64,000 nucleotides of DNA from Pristiophorus japonicus (taxonomy: Eukaryota): assembly GCF_044704955.1 (NCBI RefSeq), contig NC_091999.1, positions 48,050,001 to 48,114,000 of the forward strand, given 5' to 3'. How positions within the stretch are numbered: position 1 is the first letter of the stretch; the number at the start of each line of letters is the position of its first letter. Shown piece after piece: positions 111-60,844 of the stretch. Both the position numbers and the translations under genes were made by a program. A model generated the notes under the pieces. That model did no database searches, was not told the origin of the DNA, and worked only from the letters and a program-made list of their open reading frames with translations.

Positions 111-186
111 TCTAACCAAATTTCTGTACAAGTTGAACATACCTTCTCATCTTATCACAGTTTGCCCTGTATCCAACATCACTAAC

Positions 187-370
187 CTGGCATTGCGATG
201 GCCCAGACCGACACACCACGTCAAACCTCGCAGTAGATAGTGCTGCTGCACACCTCTGACTCGGTGATGGTTAACCGGCTCTTTATCTTTCTTCCACGAA
301 AGGCTGGTGATTTTATCTTTCTTCCAGGAAAAGCTGGTAATTTTGGGGGAGTAGTCCATCGCCAAACAGC
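187..370 (-). pseudogene. IGHM: Damaged IgM Cmu1 exon fragment from a second, truncated IgH cluster
   Basis: Translates CLAMDYSPKITSFSWKKDK-ITSLSWKKDKEP and LTITESEVCSSTIYCEV*RG; donor CCAG|GTTAGT at 186; paralogous to 52895-53194; internal deletion, 30-bp duplication and missing 5' end. Confidence 0.9.
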
Positions 371-13490: not shown

Positions 13491-15458
13491 TAGATACATA
13501 GAAACATAGAAAATAACTGCAGGATTAGGCCATTAGGCCCCTCGAGCCTGCGCCGCCATTCAATATGTTCATGGCTGACCATTCCTTCAGTTCCCCTTTC
13601 CTGCTTTCTCTCCATAACCCTTCACCCCCTTATCCGTAAGTGCCATATCTAACTCCCTCTTGAATATATCCAATGAACTGGCATCAACAACTCTCTGCGG
13701 CAGGGAATTCCACAGGTCAACAACTCTGAGTGAAGAAGTTTCGCCTCATCTCAGTGCTAAATGGCCTACCCCTTATCCAAAGACTATGTCCCCTGTTTCT
13801 GGACTTCCCGAACATCGAGAACTTTCTTCCCGCATCTAACCTGTACAGTCCCGTCAGAATCTTATATATTTCTATGAGATCCCCTCTCATCATTCTAAAC
13901 GCCAATGAATAAAGGCACAGTTGATCCAATCTCTCCTCATATGACAGTCCTGCCATCCCTGGAATCAGTCTGTTGACAATATCGGCCGAGTCAGCATGGA
14001 TTTATGAAAGGGAAATCATGCTTGATGAAACTTCTGGAATTTTTTGAGGATGTAACGAGTAGAGTGGACAAGGGAGAACCAGTGGATGTGGTGTATTTGG
14101 ACTTTCAATAGGCTTTTGACAAGGTCCCGCACAAGAGATTGGTGCACAAAATCCAAGTGCATGGTATTGGGATTAAGGTACTGGCGTGAATAGAGAACTG
14201 TTTGGCAACTGGTTTGCTGCACTCCCTCAATAGCAAGAACGTCCTTCCTCAGACTAGGAGACCAAAACTGAACACAATATACCAGGTCTGGCCGCCTCAC
14301 TCAGGCCTTGTACAACTGCAGTAAGGTCTCCCTGCTCCTATATTCAAATCCCCTAGCTATGAAGGCCAGCATGCCATTTGCCTTCTTTACCGCCTGCTGT
14401 ACCTGCGTGCCCGCTTTCAGTGACTGATGAACCATGACACCCAGGTCTCGTTGCACCTCCCCTTTTTCTAGTGTGCCGCCATTCAGATAATATTCTGCCT
14501 TTGTGTTTTTGCCCCCAAAATGGATAACCTCACATTTATCCACATTATACTGCATCTGCCGTATAATTGCCCACTCATCTAATCTGTCCAAGTCACCCTG
14601 CAGCCTCTTAGCATCCTCCTCACAGCTCGCAATACCACCCAGTTTAGTGTCATCCGCAAACTTGGAGATATTACACTCTATTCCTTCAACCAAATCGTTA
14701 ATGTATATTGTAAAGAGTTGGGGTCCCAGCACTGAGCCCTGCGGCACTTCACTAGTAGCTGCCTGCCATTCTGAAAAGGACCTGTTTATCCCGATTCTCT
14801 GCTTCCTGTCTGCCAACCAGTTCTCTATCCACATCAGTACATTAATCCCAATATCATGCGCTGGGATTTTGTGCACCAATCTCTTGTGCGGGACCTTGTC
14901 AAAAGCCTATTGAAAGTTCAATACACCACATCCACTGGTTCTCCCTTGTCCACTCTACTCGTTACATCCTCAAAAAATTCCAGAAGATTCCTCAAGCATG
15001 ATTTCCCGTTCATAAATCTATGCTGACTCGGTCCGATCCTGTCAGTGCTTTCCAAATGGGCTGCTATTTCATCCTTAATGATTGATTCCAAAATTTTCCC
15101 CACTACTGATGTCAGGCTAACCGATTTATATTTACCCGCTTTCTCTCTCCCTCCTTTTTTAAAAAGTGCCATCACATTAGCTACCCTCTAGTCAATAGGA
15201 ACTGATACAGAGTCGATAGATTGTTGGAAAATGATCAGCAATGCATCCACTATTTCCAGGGCCACTTCCGTAAGTACTCTGGGATGCAGACTATCAGGAC
15301 CCAGGGATTTATCGGCCATTATTCCCATCAATATCCCTAATACAATTTCCCGCCAATAAGGATATCGTTCAGTTCCTCATTCTCACTAGACTCACAGTCC
15401 CCTGGTACATTTTGAAGGTTTTTTGTATCTTCCTTTGTAAAGACAGAACCGAATTATT
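13491..15458 (-). mobile_element. 5'-truncated CR1 LINE (RT region) with an internal inverted duplicate segment
   Basis: VPQGSVLGPQLFTIYINDL...SKFADDTKLGG RT motifs; (catagaaa)n tail at 13491-13510. Confidence 0.95.
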
Positions 15459-15509
15459 TTCTCTATCTCTCTCTATATCTGTCTTTCTCTCTATCTGTCT
15501 CCCCCTTTG

Positions 15510-17946
15510 AACATAAGAACATAAGAACATAATAGTTAGGAACAGGAGTAGGCCATCTAGCCCCACGAGCCTGCCCCGCCATTCAATAAGATCATGGCTG
15601 ATCTGGTCGTGGACTCAGCTCCACTTACCCGCCCTCTCCCCGTAATCCTTAATTCCCTTATTGGTTAAAAATCTATCTATCTTTGACTTGAAAACATTCA
15701 ATGAGCTAGCCTCAACTGCTTCCTTGGGCAGAGAATTCCACAGATTCACAACCCTCTGGGAGAATAAATTTTTTCTCAACTCGGTTTTAAATTGACTCCT
15801 CCGTATTTTGAGGCTGTGCCCCCTAGTGCTAGTCTCCCCGACCAGTGGAAACAATCTCTCTGCCTCTATCTTGTCTATCCCTTTCATGATTTTAAATGTT
15901 TCTATAAGATCACCCCTCATCCGTCTGAACTCTAAGGAGTAAGGACCCAGTCTACTCAATCTATCATCATAAAGAAACCCCCTCATTTCTGGAATCAGCC
16001 TAGTGAATCGTCTTTGTACCCCTTCCAAAGCTAGTGTATCCTTCCTTAAGTAATGTGACCAAAACTGCACGCAGTACTCCAGTTGCGGCCTTACCAAATC
16101 TTATACAGTTGCAGCAAGACCTCCCTGCTTTTGTACTCCATAACTTTCGCAATGAAGGCCAATACTCCATTCGCCTTCCTGATTACCTGCTGTACCTGCA
16201 AACTAACCTTTTGGGATTAATGCACAAGGACCTCCAGGTCCCTTTGCACCACAGCATGTTGTAATTTCTCCCCATTCAAATAATATTCCCTTTTACTGTT
16301 TTTTTTCCCAAGGTTGATGACCTCACACTTTCCGACATTGTATCCCATCTGCCAAACCTTAGCCCATTCGCTTAACCTATCCAAATCTCCTTGCAGTCTC
16401 TCTGTGTCCTCTGCACAACCCGCGTTCCCACTATTCTTAGTGTCATCTGCAAATTTTGTTGCACTACACTCTGTCCCCTCTACTAGGTCATCCATGTATA
16501 TTGTAAACAGTTGTGGTCCCAGTATTGATCTCTGTGGCACACCACTAACCACTGATTTCCAACCAGAAAAGGACCCATTTTTCCCGACTCTCTGCTTTCT
16601 GTTCGCCAGCCAATTCTCTATCCATGTTAATATATTTCCTCTGACTCCGCGTACATTTATCTTCTGCAGTAACATTTTGTGTGGCACCTTGTCGAATGCC
16701 TTTTGGAAATCTAAATACGCCACATTCATCGGTACACCTCTATTACCATGCTTGTTATATCCTCAAAGAATTCCAGTAAGTTGGTTAAACATGATTTCCA
16801 TTTCATGAATCCATGCTGCGTCTGCTTGATTGCACTATTCCTATCTAGATGTCCCGCTAGTTCTTCCTTAATGGTAGCTTCAAGCATTTTCCCCACTACA
16901 GATGTTAAACTAACCGGCCTATAGTTACCTGCCTTTTGCCTGCCCCGTTTTTTAAACAGAGGCGTTACATTAGCTGCTCTCCAGTCCGCTGGTACCTCCC
17001 CAGAGTCCAGAGAATTTTGGTAGATTATAACCAATGCATCTGCTATAACTTCAGCCATCTCTTTTAATACCCTGGGATGTATTTCATTAGGACCAGGGGA
17101 CTTGTCTACCTTCAGTCCCATTAGCCTGTCCATCAGTACTCCCCTTGTGATAGTGATTGTCTCGAGGTCCTCCCTTCCCACATTCCTGTGGCCTGCAAAT
17201 TTTGGCATTGTTTTTGTGTATTCCACTGTGAAGGCGGAAGCAAAATAATTGTTTAAGGTCTCAGCCATTTCCACATTTCCCATTATTAAATCTCCCTTCT
17301 CATCTTCTGAGGGACCAACATTTACTTTAGTCACTCTCTTCCGTTATATATATCGGTAAAAGCTTTTACTATCTGTTTTTATATTTTGCGCCAGTTACTT
17401 TCGTAATCTATCTTTCCTTTCTTTATTGCTTTCTTAGTCATTCTTTGCTGTCGTTTAAAATTTCCCCAATCGTGTAGTTTCCCACTAACCTTGGCCACCT
17501 TATACGCATTGGTTTTTAATTTGATACTCTCCTTTATTTCCTTGGTTATCCACGGCTGGTTATCACTTCTCTTGCCGCCCCTCTTTTTCACTGGAATATA
17601 TTTTTTTGCGCACTATGAAAGAGCTCCTTAAAAGTCCTCCACTTTTCCTCAATTGTGCCACTGTTTAGTCCTTGTTTCCAGTCTACTTTAGCCAACTCTG
17701 CCCTCATCCCACTGTAGTCCCCTTTGTTTAAGCATCGTACTCTCGTTTCTGATACAACTTCCTCATCCTCAATCTGTATTACAAATTCAACCATATCGTG
17801 ATCACTCATTCCGAGAGGATCTTTTATGAGGAGATCATTTATTTTTCCTGTCTCATTACACAGGACCAGATCCAAGATGGCTTGCTCCCTTGTAGGCTCT
17901 GTTACATACTGTTCTAAGAAATAGTCCCGTATGCATTCTATGAATT
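15510..17946 (-). mobile_element. 5'-truncated CR1 LINE, second subfamily (end of endonuclease through RT)
   Basis: DLVLCNE...SDH, YRPVSLTSVVGK, LDFQKAFDKVPH, KFADDTK; (aacataag)n tail. Confidence 0.95.
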
Positions 17947-19384: not shown

Positions 19385-22300
19385 GGAATTTCGAGCTGAA
19401 TTTAGGGAGCCTGGAGCTAAATTAACAAATAGGACCTCAAAGGTAGCAATTTCAGGATAGCTGCCACTGACACCTGCTCGTCAGAGTAGGAATCGCAGGA
19501 TAGCTCAGATGAATGTGTGGTGCAGAATGGAGTGATTCAATTTCCTGGGACATTGGAAACGGTTCAGGGGGAGCTGGGACCAGTGCAAACCAGACGCTCT
19601 GCACCTGGGCAGAACCAATGTCCACGGGGGAGAGTTTGCTCGTGTTGTTGGGGAGGGGTTAAACGAATATGGCAGTGGGATGGGAACCTATGCAGGGAGA
19701 CAGAGGGAAGTATAATGGGGGCTGAAAAGTAAAGGTGGAGGGCAGAGAAACCCAAGGCAAAAATCAAAAAGGGCCACATTGAAGCCAAATTATAAAGAGA
19801 CAAGGTGCGGTAAGATAACAAGCCTGAAGGCACTGTGCCTCAATGCGAGGAGTATTCGTAATAAGGTGGACAAATTAACTGCACAGGCAGCAATGAATGA
19901 ATATGATGTAATTTGCATCACGGAGAAATGGCTCCAGGGTGACCAAGGCTGGGAACGCAACATCCAGGGATATTCACCAATCAGGAAGGATAGACAGAAA
20001 GGAAAAGGAGGTGGGGTGGCATTGCTGGTTGAAGAGGAAATTAACGCAATAGTAAGGAAGGACATTCGCGTGGATTCTGTGTGGGTGGAGCTGCGGAATA
20101 TCAAAGGGAAGAAAACGCTAGTGGGAGTTGTGTATCACCAAACAATAGTAGTGAGTTTGGGGACAGCATCAAACAAGAAAGCAGGGATGTGTGCAATATA
20201 GGTACAGAAGTTTATTGGGCGACTTTTATCTACATATAATTTGGCCTAACCACACTGGTAGCAATACTGTGGAGGAGGATTTGCTGGAGTGTATACGGGA
20301 TGTTTTACTTGACCAATATGTTGAGGAACCATCTGGAGGGCTGGCCATCCTAGACTGGTTGATGTGTAATGAGAAAGGACTAATTAGCAATCTTGTTGTG
20401 CGAGGCCCCTTGGGGAAGAGTAACCATAATAAGGTAGAATTCTTTGTTAAGGTGGAGAGTGAAACAATTAATTCTGAGACTGCGGTCCTGAACTTAAGGA
20501 AAGGTAACTTCGATGGTATGAGACATGAATTGGCTAGAATAGACTGGGAAATGATACTTAAAAGGGTTGAGGCCGATAGGCAATAGAAAACATTTAAAAT
20601 CACATGGATGAACTTCAACAATTGGAAATCCCTGTCTGGATTAAAAAAATAAAACGGGCAAGGTGGCTCAACCGTGGCTAACAAGGGAAATAAAGAATAG
20701 TGTTAAATCCAAGGAAGAGGCATTTAAATTGGTCAGAAAAAGCATCAAGCCGAGGACGGGGAGAAATTTAGAATTCAGCAGAGGAGGACAAAGCGTTTTA
20801 TTGCGGAGGGGGAAAATAGAGTATGAGAGGAAGCTTGCTGGGAACATAAAAACTTCTATAGATATGTGAAGAGAAAAAGATTAGTGAAGGCAAACGTAGG
20901 ACCCTTGCAGTCAGATTCAGGTGAATTTATAATGGGGAACAAAGGAACGGTCGACCAGTTGAACAAATATTTTGGCTCTGCATTCACGAAGGAAGACACG
21001 CATAACCTTCTGGAAATATTACGTGACCGAGGGGCTAGTGAGAAGCAGGAACTGAAGGAAATCCTTATTTGTGGGAAATTATGTTCGGAAAATTGGTGGG
21101 ACTAAAGGCCGATAAATCCCCTGGGCCTGATGGTCTGCATCCCAGAATATTTAAGGAAGTGGCCCTAAAAATAGTGGATGCATTGGTGATCATTTTCTAA
21201 CAGTCCATCAAGTCTAGATCAGTTCGTATGGACTGGAGGGTAGCGAATGTAACAACACATTTTGAAAAAGGAGGGAGAGAGAAAACACGTAATTGTAGAC
21301 CAGTAAGCCTGACATCAGTGGTGGGGAAAATGTTGGAATCAATTATTAAAGATGAAACAGCAGCACATTTGGAAAGCACTATCAGGATCGGTCCAAATCA
21401 GCATGGATTTATGAAAGGGAAATCATGCTTGACAAATCTTTTAGAATTTTGTGAGGATGCAACGAGTCGAGCGGACAAGGGAGAACCAGTGGATGTGGTG
21501 CAGTGGGACTTACAAAAGACTTTTGACAAGGTCCCACACAAGAGGTTGGTGTGCAAAATTAAAGCACATGGCATTGGAGGTAATGTATTGATGTGGATAG
21601 AGAACTGGTTGACAGAGTCGGGATAAACGGGTCCTTTTCACAATGGCAGGCAGTGACTAGTTGGGTGCCGCAGGGCTCAGTGCTGGGACCCCAATAATTT
21701 ACAATATACATCAATGAATTAGATGAAAGAATTGTGCATAATATCTCCAATTTTGCAGATGACATTATGCTGGATGGCGGTGTGATATGTGCGGAGGATG
21801 CTAAGAGGCTGCAGAGTGACTTGGACAGGTTCGGTGAGTGGGCAATTGCGTGGCAGATTTCTTTAATAACGATAAATGTGAGGTTATGCACTTTGGTGGC
21901 AAAAACACAAAGGCAGAATATTATCTGAATGGCGACAGATTCGGAAAAGAGGAAGTGCAACGAGATCCGGGTGTCATGGTACATCAGTCATTGAAGGTTG
22001 GCATGCAGGTGCAGCAGACAGAAAGAAGGCAAATAGCATGTTGGCCCCATATCTTGGGGATTTGAATATAGCAGCAGGGCGGTCTTGCTGCAGCTGTACA
22101 GGGCCTTGGTGAGGCCTCACCTGGAATAATGTGTTCAGTTTTGTTCTAATCTGAGGAAGGACGTTCTTGCTATTGAGGGAGTGCAGCGAAGGTTCACCAG
22201 ACTGATTTCCGGGATGGTAGGACTGACATATGAGGAGAGATTGGATCGACTGCGTCTGTATTTACTGGAGTTTAGAAGAATGAGAGGGGACCTCAGAAAC

Positions 22301-29317: not shown

Positions 29318-31771
29318 TTATAATTTAATGCATTTAACAATTACAGTAAAGGGATATTTCACCACATTCTTCAACTCCTCTCTGAATTTCGTCTGGGTCA
29401 CGGCATAAATACATGTGTTGGTGCAGCAACTCAGGAGCTGAAGCATTAATCCCATTTCCTGTACATATTTAGGTAGAGATACAGGAATAACGTTTAACGA
29501 ATACAATCGTTCAAAAACAGAATACAACAGAAACACTGCCCATAAGAGCATAAAATTGCCGGATATAACAAACAGTAAAATGATGGATTTCCTTCGTTTC
29601 TCCATCTCTGGGTCACTGGGACTCTCCCCACTGCTGTGGGCCCTGAGTCTCCTGCGGGCTCTGCTCGACACTAAAACGTGTCTGACAGTTAAAGTATTGA
29701 GCAGAAGGATCAGAACAAATGGAATAAACGGTGTTATAATATAATGAAGGAATTCAATTACTGCCCATGATACTGACTCATAGACTTCCAATCGAACAAA
29801 ACAAAACCAGGGACTATTGGAAATATTATACATACCTCCATACATAAAGTACCAGAAAGTGTTCTTTACACAGAACAGCGCACTCACTGTTCCCACAGCC
29901 ACAGTCGCCGTTTTCTCGGTGCAGTATTTGGTTTTGAGCTTCTGACAACAAATGGCTATACATCGATCAAAGGTAAAAGCAACTGTGAACCAGACGGAAC
30001 AGTTCGTGACTGCGTAAAGCAGGATGGCATGGATATTACAAACATTAATCTTCCACATGAACACAAACACGGTTGAATAACGAATAGCAATCTGCCTGGA
30101 TATCAGGTCGAGGATAACGACCAGTAGATCCGCCGCTGCCATTGCCACCAGGTAACGGGTGACACACTTGGAGAGACCGCACCTTCCTTGAGACAGGATC
30201 ATTATCGTCACTAAGTTCACTGTAAGAAAGAGAAAAAGAGGGAATTTATATTTCAGATTGAGAGCAACAACAGCTGTCTCAAAGTATTATGTGTGAAATG
30301 AGTCAGGATTATATGAACCAGCCATTGGGACTTGTGGTGTTTGGGTCAGGACTGATGAAATCATCGGATGGGACGTGTACTGTTTGGGACAGGACTGATT
30401 ACACCAGCGGATGGGACGTGTGGTGTTTTCCAGGGATGGGAATGTAGTATGGGGACAGCGAGGGGGATGAAATCTGTGTCCAGGGAGGAGAATGTAATTG
30501 GGGGCCAAGGGAGGGAATGGAGTCTGTGGCCAAGGAAAGGAATGGAGTCTGTGACAGGGAGGGGAATGGAGTATGTGGCCAAGGAGAGGAATCGATTCTT
30601 TGTCCACGAAAGGGAATCGAATCTCTGTACAGTGAGGGGAATGGAGTCTGTGGCCAAGGTGGGGAATGAAATCTGTGGCCTGAGAGGGGAATGCAGTCTT
30701 TGGCGAGGTTACTGCGGTTGTGTCGTAAGCTGAAGAAGATGACTTGAAATGTATTATGTGTCGAAATCAGAACCTTTCCTACCATTGTTTTGAAAGTACA
30801 CTTTGTAATTGGCTTAAGCTGACTTTCCACGAACATTGCAAATAATCTTTAAAGAAGGGACTGTCGCTTTACGAACGTGTCTGTTTACAGCTGGAACTGT
30901 GTCAACCAACTGCCTTTCACCTGGTGTGAGAAAATTACAGTCTTCCAGTAGACAGAGAGAGTTTGAGACTGGAAATATCAAACTATTTCACAATATAGTG
31001 CTCCATTTTGAATAGTTGCTACCGTGCGGCCCACCCCGAGCTCTCCTGAACTGTGGCTGAACAAGGGAAATAAATCAATTCAAACACAACTGAATAAACA
31101 TTTTACTGGAAGACGTATTGCAGTTTTAACCCTGTCCTGACCATCTGGAATTAGTGACTGTGAGGCAGAGCGGGAGGCGGTGGAAATTGCGACAACTGTC
31201 TATAGCTGAATCATTAGTGGATAATGTCTCATATCTCAGTGTATTTGTGAAGGGTCTCTCAACGCTGATTTCCACTGGTCAGTGTCATTAACAATAACCA
31301 GTGGACCTTAAAACACTTGTTACCGCTGAACACATATTTATTATCCAACACTGGGCATCAGTGCAGAAAGCTGACTGCAAGCTGTTCAATAATATAATCG
31401 TTCACCAACATATCTGTGTCAATAAAATCAAATTTCTCTCAAATCCTGTAAACCACTATCACTGGAAGCAAGTTGTGGAAACAACATACTGTTCATTGAA
31501 CTGGGAGCAGCGAATTAACAAACGATCAAACATTACATGACAGAAACTTATTTGCATTGCCAGACAAAGAACAAGAGGTTTAAATTGATACAATTAATAA
31601 CTAGAACTAAAGGACAAGGACAGCAAATACAGAGAAACATGGGTTACATAATTTATTGCAGATGAAGGACTCACCAGGAACACCAACAGCAGCGAGGAGC
31701 GGGTAATAAATACGTTCTACATCCAAAAGTGCCCACAGGATCCAAAGCTGAGTTGGAATCTCCCAGAACAT
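29318..31771 (-). CDS. Class A orphan GPCR, GPR139/GPR142-like; two exons (31771-31675, 30219-29318), 332 aa
   Basis: Exon 1 MFWEIPTQ...IYYPLLAAVGVP G|gtgagt joins in phase 1 to ttacag|TG AAC (VNLVTIMIL); seven hydrophobic helices; AMAAADLL, AFTFDRC, LSCCTNTCIY motifs; no stops. Confidence 0.92.
30440..30710. repeat. ~26-bp G-rich minisatellite in the GPCR intron
   Basis: Recurring ggggaatggagtctgtggccaagg. Confidence 0.8.
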
Positions 31772-32227: not shown

Positions 32228-32670
32228 AATGTCAGTAACATACACGGGGACTGACAGTACAGTTCAAATTAAGGATACATGGGCACTGATAATACAGTGG
32301 TTAGTAAGGTTACATGGGGCAGATAATATATTGGTCAGTAATTGTACATGAGGACTGATAATACAATTGTCAGTAAGGGTACATGGGAACTGATAATACA
32401 GTGGTTAGTAAGGGTACATAAGAACTGATAATACAATCGTCAGTAAGCGTACATGGTGACTGTTAATATAATTGTGAGTAAGGATACATTGGGACAGATA
32501 ATACAGTGGTCAGTAAGGGGACATGGTGCAGATAATATATTGGTCAGTAACGGTTCATGGGGACAGATAATACAGTGGTCAGTCAGGGCACATGGGGACA
32601 GATAACATATTGGTCAGTAAGGATACGCGTGTGCTATTATTACAATGGTCATTAAGGATTCATGGCGACC
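32228..32670. repeat. 35-bp minisatellite, about 12 copies
   Basis: Unit like catgggcactgataatacagtggttagtaaggtta. Confidence 0.9.
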
Positions 32671-32714
32671 GATGCCACACTGACAGTCACACGCCATCAA
32701 ATCGTTTATTTTCC

Positions 32715-34834
32715 TCAGAGCAGAGACTGGATGTGAGGAATGGAGATGAAAGGAGCAGAGAGGTGAGGAGAGGAGAAGAGAGAGGACAGGAGGTGGGAGG
32801 GAAGTAGACGAGAGGAGATGAGTGTGGAGGAGAGGAGAGGAGGGGAATAGGAGAGCAGAGGTGAGGAGAGGATATGCGTGGAGTGGAGAAGACAGCAGAG
32901 CAGAGCAGAGGATAGGAGGTGAGAGGAGAGGTGGGAGAAGGAAAGAGTGAAGATGAGCAGGAAGGGGAGGAGAGGTTAGTGGAGGATAGGATAGATGAAA
33001 GGGGAAGTAGAGAGGCGAGCAGAGGAGAGCAGAGCAGAGATGAGTAGAGGAAAGCAGAGGAGAGTTCAAGAGAAGATAGGAGAGGGGAAGAGAGGAGAGG
33101 AGGGGAAAGGAGATGATAGTGTAGGGGAGATGGATGGAGAGGAGAGTGGAATAGAGGTGAGGAGAAGGTAGGGGAGAGGAGAGGGATGCGAGGAGTGGAG
33201 AGGCGAGGGGAGTGGAGATGAGAGTGTAGGGTAGAGGGGTGGAGAGGAGAGTGGAGTAGAGGTGGGGAGAAGGTAGGCGACAGAAGAGAGATGAGAGTAG
33301 CGGGGAGAGGAGGAGAGGAGCGTAGGAGAGAAGGGAGGAATGGAGAGAAGTGGAGAGGTGAGAGATGATGAGAGAGAAGGAGAGTAGAGCAGAGGAGAGG
33401 GGAAGGGCAGTGGGAGAGCAGAGGAGAGACCATCAGAGGAGAGGAGAGGAAGAGAGTGGGGAGAGCAGGGGCGAGAAGAGATGAGAAGGGAGGGGAGGAG
33501 AGGGGTGAAGAGAGGGGAAGCGGAGATGAGAGTGGAGGAGAGAAGAGCTGTGGAGATTCGAGCAATGGAGAGGAGAATAGAGGAGATAAGAGGATAGGAG
33601 AGAAAAGATGAAAGCAGAGTGGAGAGAGGAGGTAGTAGATTAGAGGAGAGGAGAGGAGAAGAGAGGGGACAAGGGAGGAGTTTAGAAGCGAGGGCAGGAG
33701 AGGATAGAAGAGTGGTTAACGGAGAGGGGAGTAGAGGTGAGTGGAGAAGAGGGGAGGAAGTTAGGGGAGAGAAGAGGAGAGAGAAGACAGTGCATGAGAG
33801 GAGGAGGTGAAAAGAGGGTAGAGGAAAGGAGGGAAGAGGGGAGGAGAGTGTAGGAGGGGGAGGAGAGAAGTGGAGAAGAGAGGACTGGACAGGCAGGAGA
33901 GCAGAGGGAAGGAGAGGAGCGGGAAGGAGAGGAGAGGGGAGAACATCAGAGGAAACAAGTGAGGAGAGGAGTTAAAATGAAAGGGGAGAATAGGTGAGGA
34001 GGAGAGGAGAGGGGTGAGGAGAGGAGGGGAGAATTTAGGGGAGAGGAGTCGCGATGATTGGAGTGGAGACGAGTGGGGAGGAGAGAGGAGAGTGGACAGA
34101 GAAGCGACCTGAAAACAGGAGAGAGGAGAGGATAGGTGAGGATAGGGGTGGATCGGGGAAGACAGGAGATGAGAGAGCAGAGGAGATGAGAGGAGAATGG
34201 AGGAGAGGGAAGGGGAGGAGAATAGTGTAGGGGAGAGGGGAGAATGGAGTAGAGGCGTGGAAAAGGTAGGCAAGAGGGGAGAAAATGAGGCACAAGAGAG
34301 TTGAGGAGAACAGCTGAAAGGGAAGGAGAGTTGCGGAGAGTGGAGAGGAGAGAGGAGAGGAGACAGGAGAGAACGGGAAGACAGGTGAGAAGAGAAGTGG
34401 AGAGGAGAGAGGAGGAGATGGGAGAAGGGATGAGCCGAGTGGAGAGGATGGGGGAGCAGAGGGGAGAGGAGAGATGATGAAAGGATAAGGAGGTGAGCAG
34501 AGGGGAGAGGAGAAGAGTGTGAAGGAGAGGAGAGGCGAGAGGAGGAGAGTAGTGGAGAGGGGAGGAAAAGAGAGACGAGGGGAGGAGAGGGGAGAAGAAA
34601 GCAGAGCAGGGGAGGGTTGTGGAACGGAGAGTGGATGTTATGAGAGGAGAGGAGAGGAAAGCGGAGGGAAGAGGGTAGGGAATTAGAGGGGAGGACGGGG
34701 AGAGGAGAGGGTACAGGCGAGGGTGGGAGAGGAGAATAGAGTAGAGGAGGGTAGAAGGTAGAGGAGAGGAGAGGAGGTGCACAGAGGAGAGACGTGAGGA
34801 GAGAGGAGAGGAGATGGAGGGTGAGGAGGGGAGG
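32715..34834 (+). repeat. Degenerate (GGAGA)n polypurine satellite
   Basis: About 2.1 kb of almost only G/A on the + strand. Confidence 0.95.
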
Positions 34835-35433
34835 TGTTGTGGTAAAAAAGAGGCTTCTCTCCCTCGGGATGGACCAACTGATATAGTTAACCGACACCTC
34901 GCCCAGCTTCCCACTGTATGACGAACACGGAAGTAAACAAACGAAACCTCAGGTTTACCGGTTTTATTACGAGCAATGAACGGGAAGGTTCAGTCTTGGA
35001 ACCTCCGAAGTAGAAGAATTTTGAAGCATAATGTATACAGGTGTTGGAGAGGAGCTATCCTCCTCCAAAATCATGGAAAGGTCTATTGCTATCAGCGAAG
35101 TTACAGTGATTTGTCGACTCTTATCAGACGGGCTCTGAGTGGTACATGAAACTGCCCATCTCTCATCATTGTTTTATTGTATTTTGCCCTCCACCCCAGT
35201 CTATTCGACGCCGAGTGTGGTTGTTCTGGCTTATTTATCTCTTCATCAGCGACTTTGAAACAAAACTGCTGACTTTGGCTGTTTCAGTGTTACTAAGGTT
35301 AAGCTATAATATAATGCGTATAAATGTGTTATACCTATATAATCAAGTGTTACATACATCGACAATTGATACGTTCACTACGTTCGGCATAATTCTGACC
35401 CCCTTTCTATAACCTTACTATTTATCCTTTACA
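34835..35433 (-). repeat. 3' LTR of the ERV
   Basis: TG...CA termini; direct repeat of 42895-43492; adjacent polypurine tract. Confidence 0.9.
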
Positions 35434-46598: not shown

Positions 46599-48520
46599 AA
46601 GAAAGCAATAAAGAAAGGAAAGATCGATTACAAAGGTAAACTTGCGCAAAACATGAAAACGGATAGTAAAAGCTTTTACAGATATGTAAAACGGAAAAGA
46701 GTGACTAAAGTAAATGTTGGTCCCTTAGAAGATGAGAAGACAGTTTTAATAATGGGAAATGTGGAAATGGCTGAGAGCTAAAACAATTATTTTGCTTCGG
46801 TCTCCACAGTGGAAGACACAAAAACCATGCCAGAAATTGCTGGTCAAAGGAATGAGGGAAGGGAGGACCTTGAGACAATCACTATCACTAGGGGGGTAGT
46901 GCTGGACAGGCTAATGGGACTCAAGGTAGACAAGTCCCCTGGTCCTGATGAAATGCATCCCAGGGTATTAAAATCGATGGCGGAAGTTATAGCAGATGCA
47001 TTCGTTATAATCCACCAAAACTCTCTGGACTCTGGGGTGGTACCAGCGGATTGGAAAGAAGCTAATGTAACACTTCTGTGTAAAAAAGAGGGCAGACAAA
47101 AGGCAGGTAACTATAGGCCGGTTAGTTTAACATCTGTAGTGGGGAAAATGCTTGAAAAATCATTAAGGAAGAAATAGCGGGACATCTAGATTGGAATAGT
47201 GCAATCAAGCAGACGCAGCATGGATTCATGAAGGGGAAATCATGTTTAACTAATTTACTGGAATTCTTTGAGGAGTTAACGAGCATGGTGGATAGAGGTG
47301 AACCGATGGATGTGGTGTATTTAGATTTTCAAAAGGCATTCGATAAGGTCCCACACAAAAACTTACTGCAGAAGATAAAGGTACGCGGAGTCAGAGGAAA
47401 TGTATTAGCATTGATAGAGAATTGGCTGGCTAACAGAAAACAGAAAGTCGCGATGAATGGGTCCTTTTCGGGTTGGAAATCGGTGGTTAGTGGTGTGCCA
47501 CAGGGATCGATGCTGGGACTACCACTGTTTACAATATACATAGATGACCTGGAAGAGGGGACAGAGTGTAGTGTAACAAAATTTGCAGATGACACAAAGA
47601 TTAGTGGGAAAGCGGGTTGTACAGAGGACACAGAAAGGCTGCAAAGAGATTTAGATAGGTTAAGCGAATGGGCTAAGGCTTGCCAGATGGAATACAATGT
47701 CGGAAAGTGTGAGGTCATCCACCTTGAGGAAAAAAAACACGAAAAGGGAATATTATTTGAATGGGGAGAAATTATAACATGCTGCGATGCAGAGGGATCT
47801 GGGGGTCCTTGTCCATGAATCCCAAGATGTTAGTTTGCAGGTGCAGCAGGTAATCAGGAAGGCGAATGTAATGTTGGCCTTCATTGCCAGAGGGATGGAG
47901 TACAAAAGCAGGGAGGTCCTTCTGCAACTGTATAGGGTGTTGGTGAGGCCGCACCTGGAGTACTGCGTGCAGTTTTGGCCACCTTACTTAAGGAAGGATA
48001 TACTAGCTTTGGAGGGGGTACAGAGATGATTCACGAGGCTGATTCAGGAGATGAGGGGGTTACCTTATGATGATAGATTGAGTAGACTGGGACTTTACTC
48101 GTTGGAGTTCAGAAGGATGAGGGGTGATCGATAGAAACATTTCAAACAATGAAAGGCATAAACAAGATCGAGGCAGTGGGGTTGTTTCCACTGGTCGGGG
48201 AGACTAGAACTCGGGGGCAGAGACTCAAAATACGAGTGAGCCAATTTAAAACTGAGTTGAGAAGGAATTTCTTCTTCAACAAAGTTGTGAATCTGTGGAA
48301 TTCTCTGCAAAGGGGAGGAATTGAGGATAGCTCATTGAATGTATTCAATTCACAGATAGATAGATTTTTAACCAATAAGGGAATTAAGGGTTATGGGGAG
48401 CGGGCGGGTAAGTGGAGCTGAGTCCACTACCAGATCAGCCATGATCTTGTTGAATGGCGGAGCAGGCTCGAGAGGCTAGATGGCCTACTTCTGTTACTAA
48501 TTCTTATGTTCTTATGTTCT
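46599..48520 (+). mobile_element. 5'-truncated CR1 LINE inserted in the IgM secretory tail
   Basis: RT motifs; (ttcttatg)n tail; flanked by AATGACG at 46592-46598 and 48521-48527; same subfamily as 15510-17946. Confidence 0.95.
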
Positions 48521-48886
48521 AATGACGTTGTCCATCAGAACAAGGGAAATGCTTTACCACTGGATTTATTGACGGATCTGTTGGTGATTATCAATGGGAT
48601 CGCTTCATATCCCACCACACAGGAGTGAGAGGCGCCGCTGGCCCATTCCTTGGCTGCAATGGATAGCAGGCTGTAGATGAAGAAGGAGCTGCTGCCGTTC
48701 TCCGCCATCACCTCGGTGTTCTTGTAGTTGCCGGAATCCACCAGTTTATCATTGACGGTCCTTTTGACGAAGATCTCTCGGGGGGAGAACCTCTCACTAA
48801 GCAGGTGAGGCTGACCAACCTCTGGGCGGAGACTTCTTCTGCCGAGGGCAGGAGGACAGACATGGCCGGTTCCCGCGGATCTTTCG
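48521..48886 (-). pseudogene. IGHM: IgM Cmu4 exon with proximal secretory tail
   Basis: [33 protein letters not shown]...[11 protein letters not shown]...[17 protein letters not shown]...NKSSGK; frameshift after LVRG and a deletion in the tail. Confidence 0.95.
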
Positions 48887-49803: not shown

Positions 49804-50110
49804 CCTTTTCCTTGTGGCTGGAATCTCTGAGAGGAATCGGCATATCCTGATGGCTCACCACGCAGTAGAACTTATCCCCACTCAGCCAGTCTTTTGTCGA
49901 GATGTTTAAGTTGCTGATCACACGTTGGGATCCTCTCCGGGTTGGACGGCAATCTCTGATTTCAAAGTCTCGTTTTTTCGGGTCCAGGTCACGGTGAGCC
50001 CATAAGGAGCGTCAGACACGACACACGTTAAGGTCACCGTCGCCTCCAGTAAAACCTGTTCCAGTTACGGTGGGCGAAGAGTGATTTTTAATCGCTGCAT
50101 GGGACATCCA
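49804..50110 (-). pseudogene. IGHM: IgM Cmu3 exon
   Basis: [26 protein letters not shown]...[12 protein letters not shown]...[15 protein letters not shown]; stop and frameshifts; AG/GT boundaries. Confidence 0.95.
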
Positions 50111-52082: not shown

Positions 52083-52403
52083 CCTGAGATCTGCTGAAGT
52101 TACGGCTTTGTGTGCCCCCTTCATGAGTGACCTGGCAGGTGTGGACCGAGCCGGTGAACCATTCCCTGGCGGGGAGTGTCAGCCGACTGGCCGTCAAAAC
52201 GTTTCTGTTCATCTCAAAGGCGGGAGAGGTGGTGAAGCCCGAATCCAGGAGTTGTCCACTCTTCAGCCAATTCACGGTCAGTGACTTTGGCCTTAATTCG
52301 ATGATTGAACACATGGCGCTTGCATATCTGCTGCTGATGATTTGTTCAGTGGAACTTAGCAAGAGGAGAACAATTGGAGGAACGATGATCCGTTCAGGAC
52401 GTT
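52083..52403 (-). pseudogene. IGHM: IgM Cmu2 exon (frame open, acceptor reads TG)
   Basis: MCSIIELRPKSLTVNWLKSG...SGFTTSP...SRLTLPAREWF...TCQVTHEGGTQSRN; donor CAGG|GTAAG. Confidence 0.93.
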
Positions 52404-52552
52404 CACGAGAAGGCATTTTATTGACATTGCTTGTAAACTAAATGATTAAGAAATGCAAAGTGTCCTTATATTTTAACAAGTTCTTTGCTGTCAGATTCAC
52501 ACGAACCTGGCATTTGAAGAGAGCAAGATTGTGCACAGTATACTCAGTGTAA

Positions 52553-52894: not shown

Positions 52895-53194
52895 CTGACA
52901 TTGTGATGCTCCACGCCGACCCACCACGTCGAACCTCGCAGCAAATTGTGCTGCTCCCCAACTCGGACTCGGTGATGGTTAACTGGCTGCTCAGTGTGTA
53001 GGCTCAATTCCTTTTGAGCAATGACGGGTAGATCTTCAATCCAGTGGTGATCGGCTCTTTATCTTCCTTCCAGAAAAGTCTGATGATGTCAGGGGAGTAG
53101 TCCATCACCAAACAGCCCTACGTGATGGAGCCATCGGTGCTGGGTTGTTCACAGGAGGAGAGCAGGGCGCAGAGGGTGGGGGGAGACGGTGTTA
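52895..53194 (-). pseudogene. IGHM: IgM Cmu1 exon (300 bp, two in-frame stops)
   Basis: [33 protein letters not shown]...[40 protein letters not shown]; AG/GT boundaries. Confidence 0.95.
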
Positions 53195-59100: not shown

Positions 59101-59742
59101 GAATTGTGATTAGATGGATCATGTTAAATACATTAATTTTGATATTATAGCATATTTAAATAATAATTGGTGATATTACTACGTTATAATAATGTTAATT
59201 TAAATGTGTTCCAGCTGGAAGTATGTTAATTTTTCAGTTCTTAATTACAGCTCACGTATTGAATCTGATCATTCGGGAACATTCGGTCAGGAGATGACAA
59301 TGTAATTTTCATGAAAAAACTTAAAATTCCTTAAGGTTATTTACTGATCACTAAGCTTTCTGCTTTGTGCCTACAATGTTCTTTTAAACACATTCAAACA
59401 CAATGTTTGCATTCGATCAGAAAAACTGCAGCAATCAGAGGTCACCAAGATTAAACATTGCAGAAACGTCAAACAGTGTAATAATCATAAGGTATTTAAA
59501 GTAACCTCGACACACAGTCTCGTCAGCAAATAAATACCAAATCACATCAACAACATTTTCTGTGGAGAAACAGTTGAATTCTATAATCACTTTGCAGCAG
59601 AATCACATTGATAAGTGCAAAAAATCTCAAAACAAAATCCACCGAACCCAAGTTTCAGTGAACAAAGTAATTATTAAAATAAACAGAAATATAAAATAAA
59701 GACACAAATACAAGTGTTACTGAATCAGTGAATGCTCCTTAC

Positions 59743-59792
59743 CTGCAGTCACCGTCACCATGGTCCCTTGTCCCCAGTAGCCCATTGCGTAA
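59743..59792 (-). pseudogene. IGHJ: JH segment, apparently fused to D2 (YAMGYWGQGTMVTVTA)
   Basis: WGQG motif; donor GCAG|GTAAG; preceded directly by a 12-bp-spacer RSS. Confidence 0.95.
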
Positions 59793-59820
59793 CACAGTGA
59801 GACACGTTGTGTCAAATACT
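59793..59820 (-). promoter_or_regulatory. 12-spacer recombination signal sequence
   Basis: CACAGTG (59793-59799), 12 bp, TCAAATACT (6/9 nonamer match); no nonamer at 22/23 spacing. Confidence 0.8.
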
Positions 59821-60137
59821 CCGGCGGACTGTTAACTGTAAAATACAGAGATTAAATTCCACACAGCTCTAAAAACCCGATTCCGACTCTCGTAAGAGTG
59901 AATCAGCGAGATATTTCATTTTTTACCGTTCATTATATTTACAAAAATGATTGGAATACTTCTGAAGCATCTGTGCATGTTCAACATGGCAGTCAATAGT
60001 AATAAAGAAGAAAACTGTTATACATTTAAATATATATATATATATAACTTATTTCTAATTATTTTTATTTAAGCCTCAGTTCCTTCGACGCTCCTGGCGT
60101 GGTAATGGTCGCAGGTTTGAGCAAACTCACTGTCTGG

Positions 60138-60175
60138 GGTTTTTGTATGGAGAGCTCGCTCTGTATTTCACCGTG
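60138..60175 (-). promoter_or_regulatory. 22-spacer recombination signal sequence
   Basis: CACGGTG, 22 bp, perfect ACAAAAACC. Confidence 0.92.
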
Positions 60176-60495
60176 ACCCACTCCCGTAGTCCTTCCTTGC
60201 ACAGTAATAGATGGCGGTGTCTTCGCTCCTCATGTTCTTCATGTCCAACGTGAAGATGTTGTTTGAAGTGTCTTTGGATACAGTAACTCGGCTCTCAATC
60301 CCTGGGACGTTATTCTTGTTCGATGGAGTGTAATAGTAAACCAGCCACTCCAGCTCCTGTGCGGGAACCTGGCGGACCCAGTTCATCCCATATCCGCTAA
60401 GATCGAACCCGCTGGTTTACAGGTCAGTCTCAGGAAGCCTCAGGAAATCCTGGTCTTCGCCTCGGGCTGAGTCAACACCACATCCGACTGGACAC
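60176..60495 (-). pseudogene. IGHV: VH exon fused to a D-like segment
   Basis: VQSDVVLTQPEA...*..LRLTCK (1-bp deletion) [15 protein letters not shown]...[16 protein letters not shown]; one stop and one frameshift. Confidence 0.95.
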
Positions 60496-60623
60496 CTGTA
60501 AAAATAATCAAAATACCCCGAGGATCAATCCTCGAAAAATGATTCCTGACTCTGTAAAATTCCAGAGAGAGACTTTCACTGAGACAGTAACAATGAGAAA
60601 ATTGGACAATAAAATCTACTCAC

Positions 60624-60669
60624 GGGAAAGTAAAGCCAGCAACAGAACGAAAGCAATCGCCGACCTCAT
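60624..60669 (-). pseudogene. IGHV: VH leader exon (46 bp)
   Basis: MRSAIAFVLLLALLS C|gtgagt, in phase with the VH exon. Confidence 0.92.
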
Positions 60670-60760
60670 CCTCATGGCAATGTGTGGTGACTGGTTCCGG
60701 CAAGAACTCACTGAGCAAACCCACTCCCAGACTGTTGTATTGCGCTCCCAGTGGCCGGCA

Positions 60761-60844
60761 GCTAAATACCCGGGTGATGGGGGCGAGGTTAAAGGCGCCA
60801 CCCATTGATTCCCTGATGGAAGCGGTTTCTGGATCCACGTCACT
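60761..60844 (-). promoter_or_regulatory. Putative VH promoter: TATA-like TATTTAG and CRE-like decamer AGTGACGTGG
   Basis: About 95 and 170 bp upstream of the leader ATG; shark VH promoters are known to use a CRE/TCR-beta-like decamer rather than the octamer. Confidence 0.55.

What the first reader, a model, noticed from the sequence alone, without database searches (positions are those of the whole stretch)
59743..60200. Germline pre-rearranged VD1 - D2J immunoglobulin heavy-chain cluster
Seen: VH runs YYCARK straight into a D-like GACTACGGGAGTGGGT and then a 22-spacer RSS. About 370 bp further on, a 12-spacer RSS abuts TTACGCAATGG+JH. Only two RSSs remain. Known: shark IgM clusters are V-23 / 12-D1-22(23) / 12-D2-12 / 23-J with segments 300-400 bp apart, and germline-joined forms exist in elasmobranchs. 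Inference: two RAG-type joins (V-D1 and D2-J) were fixed in the germline, leaving the D1-D2 interval and one 12/23-compatible pair. One further join would complete it. It is a fossil of germ-cell RAG activity and non-ordered rearrangement, and although the gene is dead its RSSs could still be RAG substrates.
Basis: partly seen in the sequence, partly recalled or inferred. Interest (0 to 1): 0.8.

Follow-up and report, generated by a model that had tools for sequence, protein, structure and literature searches.

The report
Dead, partly pre-joined shark IgM cluster
This is a decayed copy of a shark antibody (IgM) heavy-chain gene whose V piece was fused to a D piece in inherited DNA and whose J piece carries a D-type recombination signal. 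Sharks and skates have been known to have this layout since the 1980s-90s, and it recurs in this genome, so it is an ordinary further example.

Summary
On the minus strand lie a split leader and a VH exon. After YYCARK comes a 16-nt D-like stretch, then a 22-spacer RSS (15 of 16 consensus positions). After 317 nt comes a 12-spacer RSS (perfect heptamer, nonamer 6/9) that abuts a 50-nt JH. Four C-mu exons start 6.5 kb downstream. These are the only two RSSs. V, C-mu1, C-mu3 and C-mu4 carry stops or frameshifts.

- Read contigs cover the 12-RSS/J side, and probably the D/22-RSS side, at single-copy depth. The layout is therefore inherited, not somatic.
- The V-D fusion is supported. A paralogous V ends 3 nt after GCAAGG and has a different RSS spacer.
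- The supposed D2 remnant (TTACGCAATGG) is J sequence. It lines up with an unrearranged paralogous J right up to the heptamer.
- A paralogous J in another sample has the same 12-RSS flank.

So the 12-RSS on J is a family layout, not a join private to this cluster.

This scan has already noted the same VD-DJ layout, in intact copies, at several other places in this genome. Reviews list VD1-D2J clusters in horned shark and skate. It is a new member of a known kind and of low interest.

The parts
60624..60675 (-). Leader exon (ATG at 60675-60673, 52 nt, GT donor at 60623-60622)
   Evidence: Read. It is open and hydrophobic, in the usual split-leader layout.
60192..60495 (-). VH exon, through YYCARK. 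It is disabled by TGA at 60442-60440 (FR1) and a 1-nt deletion within 60421-60411 (just before CDR1).
   Evidence: Pfam V-set E=1.6e-13 on the open 75-aa piece. 64-65% identity to shark and chimaera VH proteins. Lesions were located by three-frame reading against P0003.
60176..60191 (-). D-like coding stretch GACTACGGGAGTGGGT, fused to V with no RSS between. The exact V/D border is unknown, and AAG at 60194-60192 may be V, N or D.
   Evidence: A paralogous V in the reads has only 3 nt between GCAAGG and its heptamer-like CACAGCG. Here there are 19 nt (loose end at 60195).
60138..60175 (-). 22-spacer RSS (CACGGTG, 22 nt, ACAAAAACC), of the type found 3' of D
   Evidence: 1 mismatch in 16. The spacer is unlike that of the paralogous V's RSS.
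59821..60137 (-). Intersegment DNA between the two RSSs, with a (TA)n run at about 60035-60057. It holds no further RSS or D.
   Evidence: It is essentially single-copy at 90% likeness or more in the reads (bins 59918-60091).
59793..59820 (-). 12-spacer RSS (AGTATTTGA, 12 nt, CACTGTG) abutting J
   Evidence: The same RSS with the same spacer length is present in a paralog from another sample (X6 record 19).
59743..59792 (-). JH coding segment, 50 nt (YAMGYWGQGTMVTVTA), with GT donor at 59742. It is full length, with no recognisable D2 letters.
   Evidence: It is colinear with an unrearranged paralogous J right up to the heptamer (loose ends at 59785).
52895..53194 (-). C-mu1 exon, with two in-frame stops (53120-53118 and 53006-53004). 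The J-to-C-mu1 intron is 6,548 nt.
   Evidence: Weak C1-set match.
52084..52430 (-). C-mu2 exon (open; the 5' border is approximate)
   Evidence: C1-set E=8.6e-12. It aligns with the second constant domain of mu and epsilon chains.
49804..50110 (-). C-mu3 exon, broken by at least one frameshift
   Evidence: Its parts lie in different reading frames. Weak C1-set match.
48535..48886 (-). C-mu4 exon, with a frameshift and a degenerate tailpiece (borders approximate)
   Evidence: C1-set E=2e-9. Many of the best solved-structure matches are the last domain of mu chains.

Best explanation
This is a decayed copy of an inherited, partly pre-joined IgM heavy-chain minicluster of a shark.

In the germ line of an ancestor, the RAG recombinase made an ordinary coding joint between V (23-type RSS) and the first D (5' 12-RSS). 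That left the D's 3' 22-spacer RSS behind the fused VD.

The J of this cluster type carries a 12-spacer RSS directly on a full-length J. That is the signal that normally precedes a second D. This feature was not made in this copy. It is shared with paralogous clusters. It stems from an older germline event that removed D2, either a D2-J coding joint that trimmed all of D2 or a hybrid joint of D2's 5' RSS to the J coding end.

The cluster type then spread by duplication. This copy later lost function through stops and frameshifts in V, C-mu1, C-mu3 and C-mu4.

The remaining 22/12 RSS pair obeys the 12/23 rule, so one deletional join would in principle complete a VDJ. A flush join would be out of frame, and the product could not encode a chain.

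Shown here: the anatomy, the lesions, that contigs at single-copy read depth cover the 12-RSS/J side and probably the D/22-RSS side, and the paralog evidence.

Inferred: RAG as the agent, the order of events, and spread by duplication.
For: - Anatomy and RSS statistics.
- Cluster context fits shark IgM miniloci. Segments are about 370 nt apart and J to C-mu1 is 6,548 nt, against about 400 bp and 6.3-6.8 kb in nurse shark (PMC2435157). There are four C1-set exons.
- Inherited, J side. In DNA runs X1/X3 a 270-nt contig of depth 119 spans 59751-60016, covering J, the 12-RSS and part of the interval. Flanking unique contigs have depth 99-131.
- Inherited, D side. One contig of depth 84-105 covers 60168 and reaches at least 39 nt to either side. 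It therefore covers the RSS heptamer, the D and the end of V.
- Seven or more disabling lesions are spread over 12 kb. This fits old germline DNA, not a lymphocyte clone.
- V-D fusion. A paralogous V end in the same reads continues after GCAAGG with only 3 letters. Then comes a heptamer-like CACAGCG and a spacer unlike the one here (loose end at 60195).
- J side. A paralogous J has its heptamer 5 letters beyond 59785 and is colinear with this J. X6 record 19, from another sample and study, matches 59751-59857 with 8 differences and one 2-nt gap. That stretch is J, the 12-RSS with unchanged spacer length, and 37 nt of flank.
- Scan notes, used as leads only: many one-D clusters with a 12-RSS on J, and several intact VD-joined clusters, in this genome.
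- Known class.
Against: - No unrearranged or intact paralogous cluster of this genome could be fetched. Homology of 59821-60137 to a D-J or a D1-D2 interval was therefore not tested.
- The V/D border and any trimming or N/P letters cannot be defined.
- All DNA support comes from one sample of one study. It may be the animal that the assembly was made from.
- At 60168 it is ambiguous on which side the contig ends. Only about 16 letters of V are certainly bridged.
- The paralog evidence rests on short contigs and on 22-30-letter loose ends.
- Reads differ from the assembly at about 1.5% of positions in the interval. A second, very similar copy or haplotype therefore exists and is not resolved.
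Confidence: 0.72

Rival explanations
1. A canonical V-D1-D2-J cluster underwent two coding joins of its own in the germ line (V-D1 and D2-J). TTACGCAATGG is what is left of D2, and 59793-60175 is the old D1-D2 interval.
For: The two RSS types left are exactly those expected, the 3' signal of D1 (22) and the 5' signal of D2 (12). VD1-D2J clusters are described in horned shark and skate. This J has 2 letters (TT) next to the heptamer that two paralogs lack.
Against: The letters called D2 are colinear with an unrearranged paralogous J. The coding stretch is 50 nt against 48 nt there, so at most 2 letters could be non-J. A paralog in another sample has the same 12-RSS and flank (X6 record 19). Scan notes report the 12-RSS J in many clusters.
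Confidence: 0.1
2. No D is fused. This is a D-less V/J cluster in which the 22-spacer RSS is V's own, and the 16-19 extra letters are V-encoded or filler left by a deletion of the D region.
For: V segments also carry a long-spacer RSS, and 22 against 23 nt is a small difference. The D-like letters could not be matched to any known D of this genome.
Against: A paralogous V with an FR3 end at least 90% alike stops 3 nt after GCAAGG. Its RSS spacer bears no likeness to the one here. Scan notes give 23 nt for V and 22 nt for the 3' signal of D in this genome (untested). The extra letters read DYGSG, a typical D-type composition.
Confidence: 0.08
3. The configuration is somatic or an assembly artefact: a partly rearranged allele from lymphocytes in the sequenced tissue, or a mis-join of paralogs.
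For: VD-DJ intermediates do occur in shark lymphocytes and thymocytes (PMC2435157). A VDJ-type contig of depth 14 in run X1 shows that some rearranged or joined form is present in the sample. Only one DNA sample holds the stretch.
Against: Short-read contigs cover the 12-RSS/J side at 84-119x and probably the D/22-RSS side, the same depth as the unique flanks. The cluster is riddled with old lesions over 12 kb. The same layout recurs elsewhere in the genome (untested).
Confidence: 0.03
4. The joined VD was not made by RAG at this locus. It was copied in by gene conversion from another joined cluster, or from a reverse-transcribed partly rearranged transcript.
For: Clusters are numerous and similar. 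LINE reverse transcriptases lie nearby. Partly rearranged transcripts exist in sharks.
Against: The leader intron and the J-C intron are present, so the cluster is not a processed copy. Conversion would still need a RAG-made donor, so this only moves the event elsewhere.
Confidence: 0.05

Closest known systems
Partly germline-joined IgM clusters of cartilaginous fish (VD-J, VD-DJ / VD1-D2J, VDD-J), described in horned shark and little skate
   Same: It is a minicluster with V fused to D in inherited DNA and one compatible RSS pair left. It has the same spacing and J-C distance, and is often non-functional. The class is listed explicitly as 'VD1-D2J//C' in PMC2193153 and as 'VD-DJ' in PMC5192425.
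   Different: No D2-derived letters are visible on the J side here. The 12-RSS sits on a full-length J, a layout shared by paralogs. 'VD-J on a one-D, 12-RSS-J cluster type' therefore describes it better than two coding joins. The species differs: one scan note names it as the Japanese sawshark, which was not verified here.
Fully germline-joined shark Ig genes (nurse shark IgM1gj VDJ; NS4/NS3 light-chain VJ), attributed to RAG activity in germ cells (Lee et al. 2000, PMC2193156)
   Same: The same inferred mechanism: an ordinary RAG coding joint fixed in the germ line. Some joined copies are pseudogenes.
   Different: Those genes are fully joined and some are expressed early in life. This copy is partly joined and dead.
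Germline hybrid-joint RSS swap in a horned shark V-D-D-J cluster (Kokubu et al. 1988, as discussed in PMC2193153)
   Same: It is a precedent for RAG changing which signal type sits on which segment in inherited DNA. It is a possible route to a 12-RSS on an untrimmed J.
   Different: That case is an inversion of the D1-D2 interval with both Ds kept. Here D2 is absent, and no test could tell a hybrid joint from a fully trimmed coding joint.
Somatic VD-DJ intermediates of nurse shark lymphocytes (Malecek et al. 2008, PMC2435157)
   Same: An identical topology, arising because the four segments rearrange in no fixed order.
   Different: Those intermediates are found only in lymphoid DNA. Here the layout is present at full single-copy depth and in a long-dead gene.

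Membership tests
Cartilaginous-fish IgM heavy-chain minicluster | Split leader plus V-set exon, and a J with the WGxG motif and a splice donor | tested here: met
   V is 64-65% identical to shark and chimaera VH.
Cartilaginous-fish IgM heavy-chain minicluster | Segments a few hundred bp apart; one set of four C1-set exons about 6-7 kb behind J | tested here: met
   369 nt between heptamers. The intron is 6,548 nt. Four C exons lie at 53194-48535, and many of the best matches of the last one are mu-chain C4. Reference figures come from PMC2435157.
Cartilaginous-fish IgM heavy-chain minicluster | Canonical signal layout V-23 / 12-D1-22 / 12-D2-12 / 23-J | tested here: not met
   Only two RSSs are present, a 22 behind VD and a 12 on J. 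The canonical layout itself is quoted from established knowledge (Kokubu et al. 1988). That paper is not held.
Germline partly joined VD-DJ cluster | V fused to D with no RSS between, and the D's 3' long-spacer RSS kept | tested here: met
   Comparison with the paralogous V end in the reads.
Germline partly joined VD-DJ cluster | D2-derived coding letters between the 12-RSS and J | tested here: not met
   The J side is colinear with an unrearranged paralogous J up to the heptamer, 50 nt against 48 nt.
Germline partly joined VD-DJ cluster | Remaining interval homologous to the D1-D2 intersegment of open clusters | not testable with these tools
The sequence look-up in the scan index came back blank.
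Germline partly joined VD-DJ cluster | Present in germline or non-lymphoid DNA, and in several individuals | tested here: inconclusive
   Full single-copy depth in one sample, but only one sample and one study hold it. The tissue is not known.
Functional RAG substrate pair | CAC-initiated heptamers, A-rich nonamers, and 12- and 23(22)-nt spacers in deletional orientation | tested here: met
   This is a motif-level test only. The 12-RSS nonamer is 6/9. Cleavage was not tested.

The most novel reading that the evidence does not exclude
The 12-RSS on an untrimmed J could record a germline hybrid joint. D2's 5' 12-RSS would have been ligated to the J coding end, deleting D2 and J's own 23-RSS. That would turn a two-D IgM cluster into a TCR-beta-like V23 / 12-D-22 / 12-J unit, which then multiplied in this shark. 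This dead copy, with 2 extra letters (TT) at the RSS/J border, would preserve a junctional footprint of that event on top of a later V-D coding joint.
Probability: 0.2. Interest if true: 0.45.

Novelty: new member of a known kind. Interest (0 to 1): 0.18.

Why it matters
It adds one more pseudogene example to the long-known evidence that RAG has cut and joined antibody genes in the germ line of cartilaginous fish.

Its modest value is as a neutral 'fossil' copy. Placed in a tree with the intact VD-joined and one-D clusters of the same genome, it could help count how many germline joining events happened and roughly when. It could also help show whether the 12-RSS on J arose by a coding joint or by a hybrid joint.

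On its own it changes nothing in the current picture.

Tried and rejected
- Self-BLAST of 59700-60800 against the window found no second V, D or J to compare with. The only other Ig remnant is a C-mu1 piece at 185-368.
- The word search with the open V piece gave only three distant VH proteins, at 64-65% identity. None was from this species.
- The word search with C-mu2 gave nothing in the allowed length range. Under the length rule, a blank there says nothing about full-length chains.
- The scan index gave nothing by sequence or by an eight-word query.
- Kokubu 1988 (PMC454840) and Lee 2008 (PMC2590587) are not held. PMC2191167 is held as an abstract only. The canonical 23 / 12-22 / 12-12 / 23 layout therefore rests on established knowledge, not on a text read here.
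- A 23-spacer RSS on J was rejected: no nonamer lies at that distance. A hidden D in the interval was rejected: no further heptamer.
- I checked whether the depth-14 VDJ-type contig in X1 (joint 59776 to 60196) is this cluster completing its last join. It was rejected, because its 28 letters in between do not resemble this cluster's D and only 27 letters match on one side.
- The C exons were searched one by one.
- The big representative search and the structure tools were not used, because the protein families were not in doubt.

Full report
**What is there.** The gene lies on the minus strand.
- A 52-nt leader exon (60675-60624) is followed by a 128-nt intron and a VH exon starting at 60495.
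- After ...TATTACTGTGCAAGGAAG, the sequence runs without any signal into GACTACGGGAGTGGGT (60191-60176).
- Then comes the heptamer CACGGTG, a 22-nt spacer and the consensus nonamer ACAAAAACC (60175-60138).
- After 317 nt (60137-59821) comes AGTATTTGA, a 12-nt spacer and CACTGTG (59820-59793).
- This is followed directly by a 50-nt J-side coding stretch (59792-59743...YAMGYWGQGTMVTVTA) and a GTAAGG donor.

**More than chance?**
- The 22-spacer signal has 1 mismatch in 16 specified positions. With up to 3 mismatches allowed, shuffled windows give 0.6 matches.
- The 12-spacer signal has a perfect heptamer but 3 nonamer mismatches. As a bare motif it is within chance (0.84 expected). Its weight comes from sitting exactly on a J.
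- No nonamer lies at 22-23 nt from that heptamer (read).
- No other RSS heptamer lies in 59700-60260, except the usual cryptic one in the Cys codon.
- A weak 12-spacer match (TACAGAG) is nested in the 22-RSS. I attach no meaning to it.

**Context.**
- Four Ig C1-set exons follow on the same strand: C-mu1 53194-52895, C-mu2 about 52430-52084, C-mu3 50110-49804 and C-mu4 about 48886-48535.
- Many of the best solved-structure matches of the last exon are the fourth constant domain of mu chains. The second exon aligns with the second domain of mu and epsilon chains.
- The J-to-C-mu1 intron is 6,548 nt and the segments are about 370 nt apart. Nurse shark IgM miniloci show about 400 bp and 6.3-6.8 kb (PMC2435157).
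- The exons were searched one by one. I did not build or search a joined model.

**It is dead.**
- V has a TGA at 60442-60440 and a 1-nt deletion in 60421-60411.
- C-mu1 has two in-frame stops (53120-53118, 53006-53004).
- C-mu3 and C-mu4 are split over reading frames.
- A LINE reverse transcriptase lies about 120 nt behind C-mu4.

**Germline or somatic?**
- Only one sample of one study holds the stretch, so there is no independent animal.
- Within that sample, short-read contigs give a clear answer.
- A 270-nt contig of depth 119 spans 59751-60016, covering J, the 12-RSS and part of the interval.
- One contig of depth 84-105 covers 60168 with at least 39 letters to either side. It therefore covers the heptamer, the D and the end of V.
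- Unique flanking contigs have depth 99-131.
- A lymphocyte-only configuration could not reach single-copy depth, and a gene with seven or more old lesions is not a fresh clone.
- Caveats: about 16 letters of V are certainly bridged. The reads also differ from the assembly at about 1.5% of positions in the interval (59863, 59889, 59923, 60168), so a second haplotype or a near-identical copy exists.

**The V-D side.**
- A loose end at 60195 in run X3 shows a paralogous V. After GCAAGG it has 3 more letters, then a heptamer-like CACAGCG, then a spacer with no likeness to the one here.
- This cluster has 19 letters after GCAAGG, and its signal has a 22-nt spacer.
- That fits a V-to-D coding joint that left the D's 3' signal. 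It argues against the signal being V's own.
- The exact border, and any trimming or added letters, cannot be defined without the free D of sister clusters.

**The J side.**
- Loose ends at 59785 in X3 and X6 (+ strand, GCCGTCACAGTGTTACATTCCC...) show a paralogous J with only 5 coding letters beyond 59785 before its heptamer.
  - That J has no nonamer at 12-nt distance, so it is an unrearranged J of 48 nt with another signal type.
  - The J here is colinear with it up to the heptamer and is 50 nt long.
  - The letters TTACGCAATGG are therefore J, not a D2 remnant. At most the first two (TT) could be junctional.
- X6 record 19 comes from another sample and study. The run is evidently RNA, since two of its contigs show J spliced to a C-mu1 start.
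  - It matches 59751-59857 with 8 differences and a 2-nt gap at 59791.
  - That stretch is J, the heptamer, a 12-nt spacer of unchanged length, the nonamer and 37 nt of flank.
  - At 92% identity this is a paralog, so a 12-RSS on J is a family layout in this species.

**Earlier notes of this scan (leads, not evidence).**
- The same genome is reported to hold many clusters wired V-23 / 12-D-22 / 12-J, with a full-length J.
- It is also reported to hold several intact clusters with V already fused to D plus a 12-RSS J. That is the layout seen here.
- One note names the Japanese sawshark. I did not verify the species.
- My read-based paralog evidence agrees with these notes.

**Literature.**
- Partly and fully pre-joined clusters have been known since 1988.
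- Lewis and Wu list 'VDD-J//C, VDJ//C, or VD1-D2J//C' for horned shark and little skate. They also describe a germline hybrid joint that swapped signals (PMC2193153).
- A 2016 review lists 'VD-J, VD-DJ' and 'VDJ' (PMC5192425).
- RAG action in germ cells is the accepted cause (PMC2193156; PMC8355894; PMC4279169).
- Non-ordered rearrangement, with somatic VD-DJ intermediates, is documented in PMC2435157.
- No paper on sawshark Ig genes is in the held library.
- The canonical 23 / 12-22 / 12-12 / 23 layout is quoted from established knowledge (Kokubu et al. 1988). That paper could not be read here.

**Mechanism, as best supported.**
- An ancestor cluster of the one-D, 12-RSS-J type underwent a RAG coding joint of V to D in germ cells.
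- That ancestor type was itself made earlier by loss of D2, through a fully trimmed D2-J coding joint or a hybrid joint.
- The resulting VD / J unit duplicated, and this copy decayed.
- The remaining pair (22 and 12) obeys the 12/23 rule and is in deletional orientation, so RAG could in principle still cut it.
- A flush join would be out of frame, and V and C are dead anyway.
- Shown: the anatomy, the lesions, inherited status in one animal, and the paralog relations.
- Inferred: the agent, the order of events and the duplication history.

**Verdict.** This is a further, non-functional member of a known kind that this scan has already met elsewhere in this genome. Interest is low.

Noticed in passing
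window 185-368 (-): A second C-mu1-like remnant, 63-65% identical to pieces of this cluster's C-mu1. It is the edge of another decayed IgM cluster. No matching V, D or J is present in the window.
   Followed up: partly
window 59776/60196 (reads, run X1): A contig of depth 14, against about 100 for single-copy DNA, joins a V end to a J with 28 other letters in between, and it is out of frame. It is a VDJ from another cluster. It is either a germline-joined pseudogene or a somatic clone in the sequenced tissue. It is not this cluster's D.
   Followed up: partly
window 59743-59785 (reads, run X6): The small run X6 behaves as RNA. One contig holds an unrearranged J with its RSS flank spliced to a C-mu1 start, which is a sterile germline transcript of a canonical cluster. 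Another shows J spliced to a different C1 start.
   Followed up: no
window 60138-60165 (-): Nested in the 22-spacer RSS is a 12-spacer match (TACAGAG, 12 nt, ACAAAAACC) that shares the nonamer. Its heptamer lacks the essential CAC, so it is probably meaningless.
   Followed up: no
window 59863, 59889, 59923, 60168: Read contigs at full depth differ from the assembly at about 1.5% of positions in the intersegment DNA. In X1 both letters occur. This means either a divergent second haplotype or a very recent duplicate of this dead cluster.
   Followed up: no
window 46782-48418 (+), 14304-17343 (-), 19716-21623 (+): LINE-type reverse transcriptase ORFs (Pfam RVT_1). One lies only about 120 nt behind C-mu4 of the dead cluster, where the membrane exons would be expected.
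   Followed up: partly
window 29321-30286 (-): An open 322-aa rhodopsin-family receptor ORF (7tm_1, E=1e-15) between the two Ig remnants. It is already noted by the scan as a separate finding.
   Followed up: partly
window 32600-35000 (-): Long open frames of Ser/Pro/Leu-rich low-complexity repeats with strong GC skew (0.35-0.67). Their nature was not examined.
   Followed up: no
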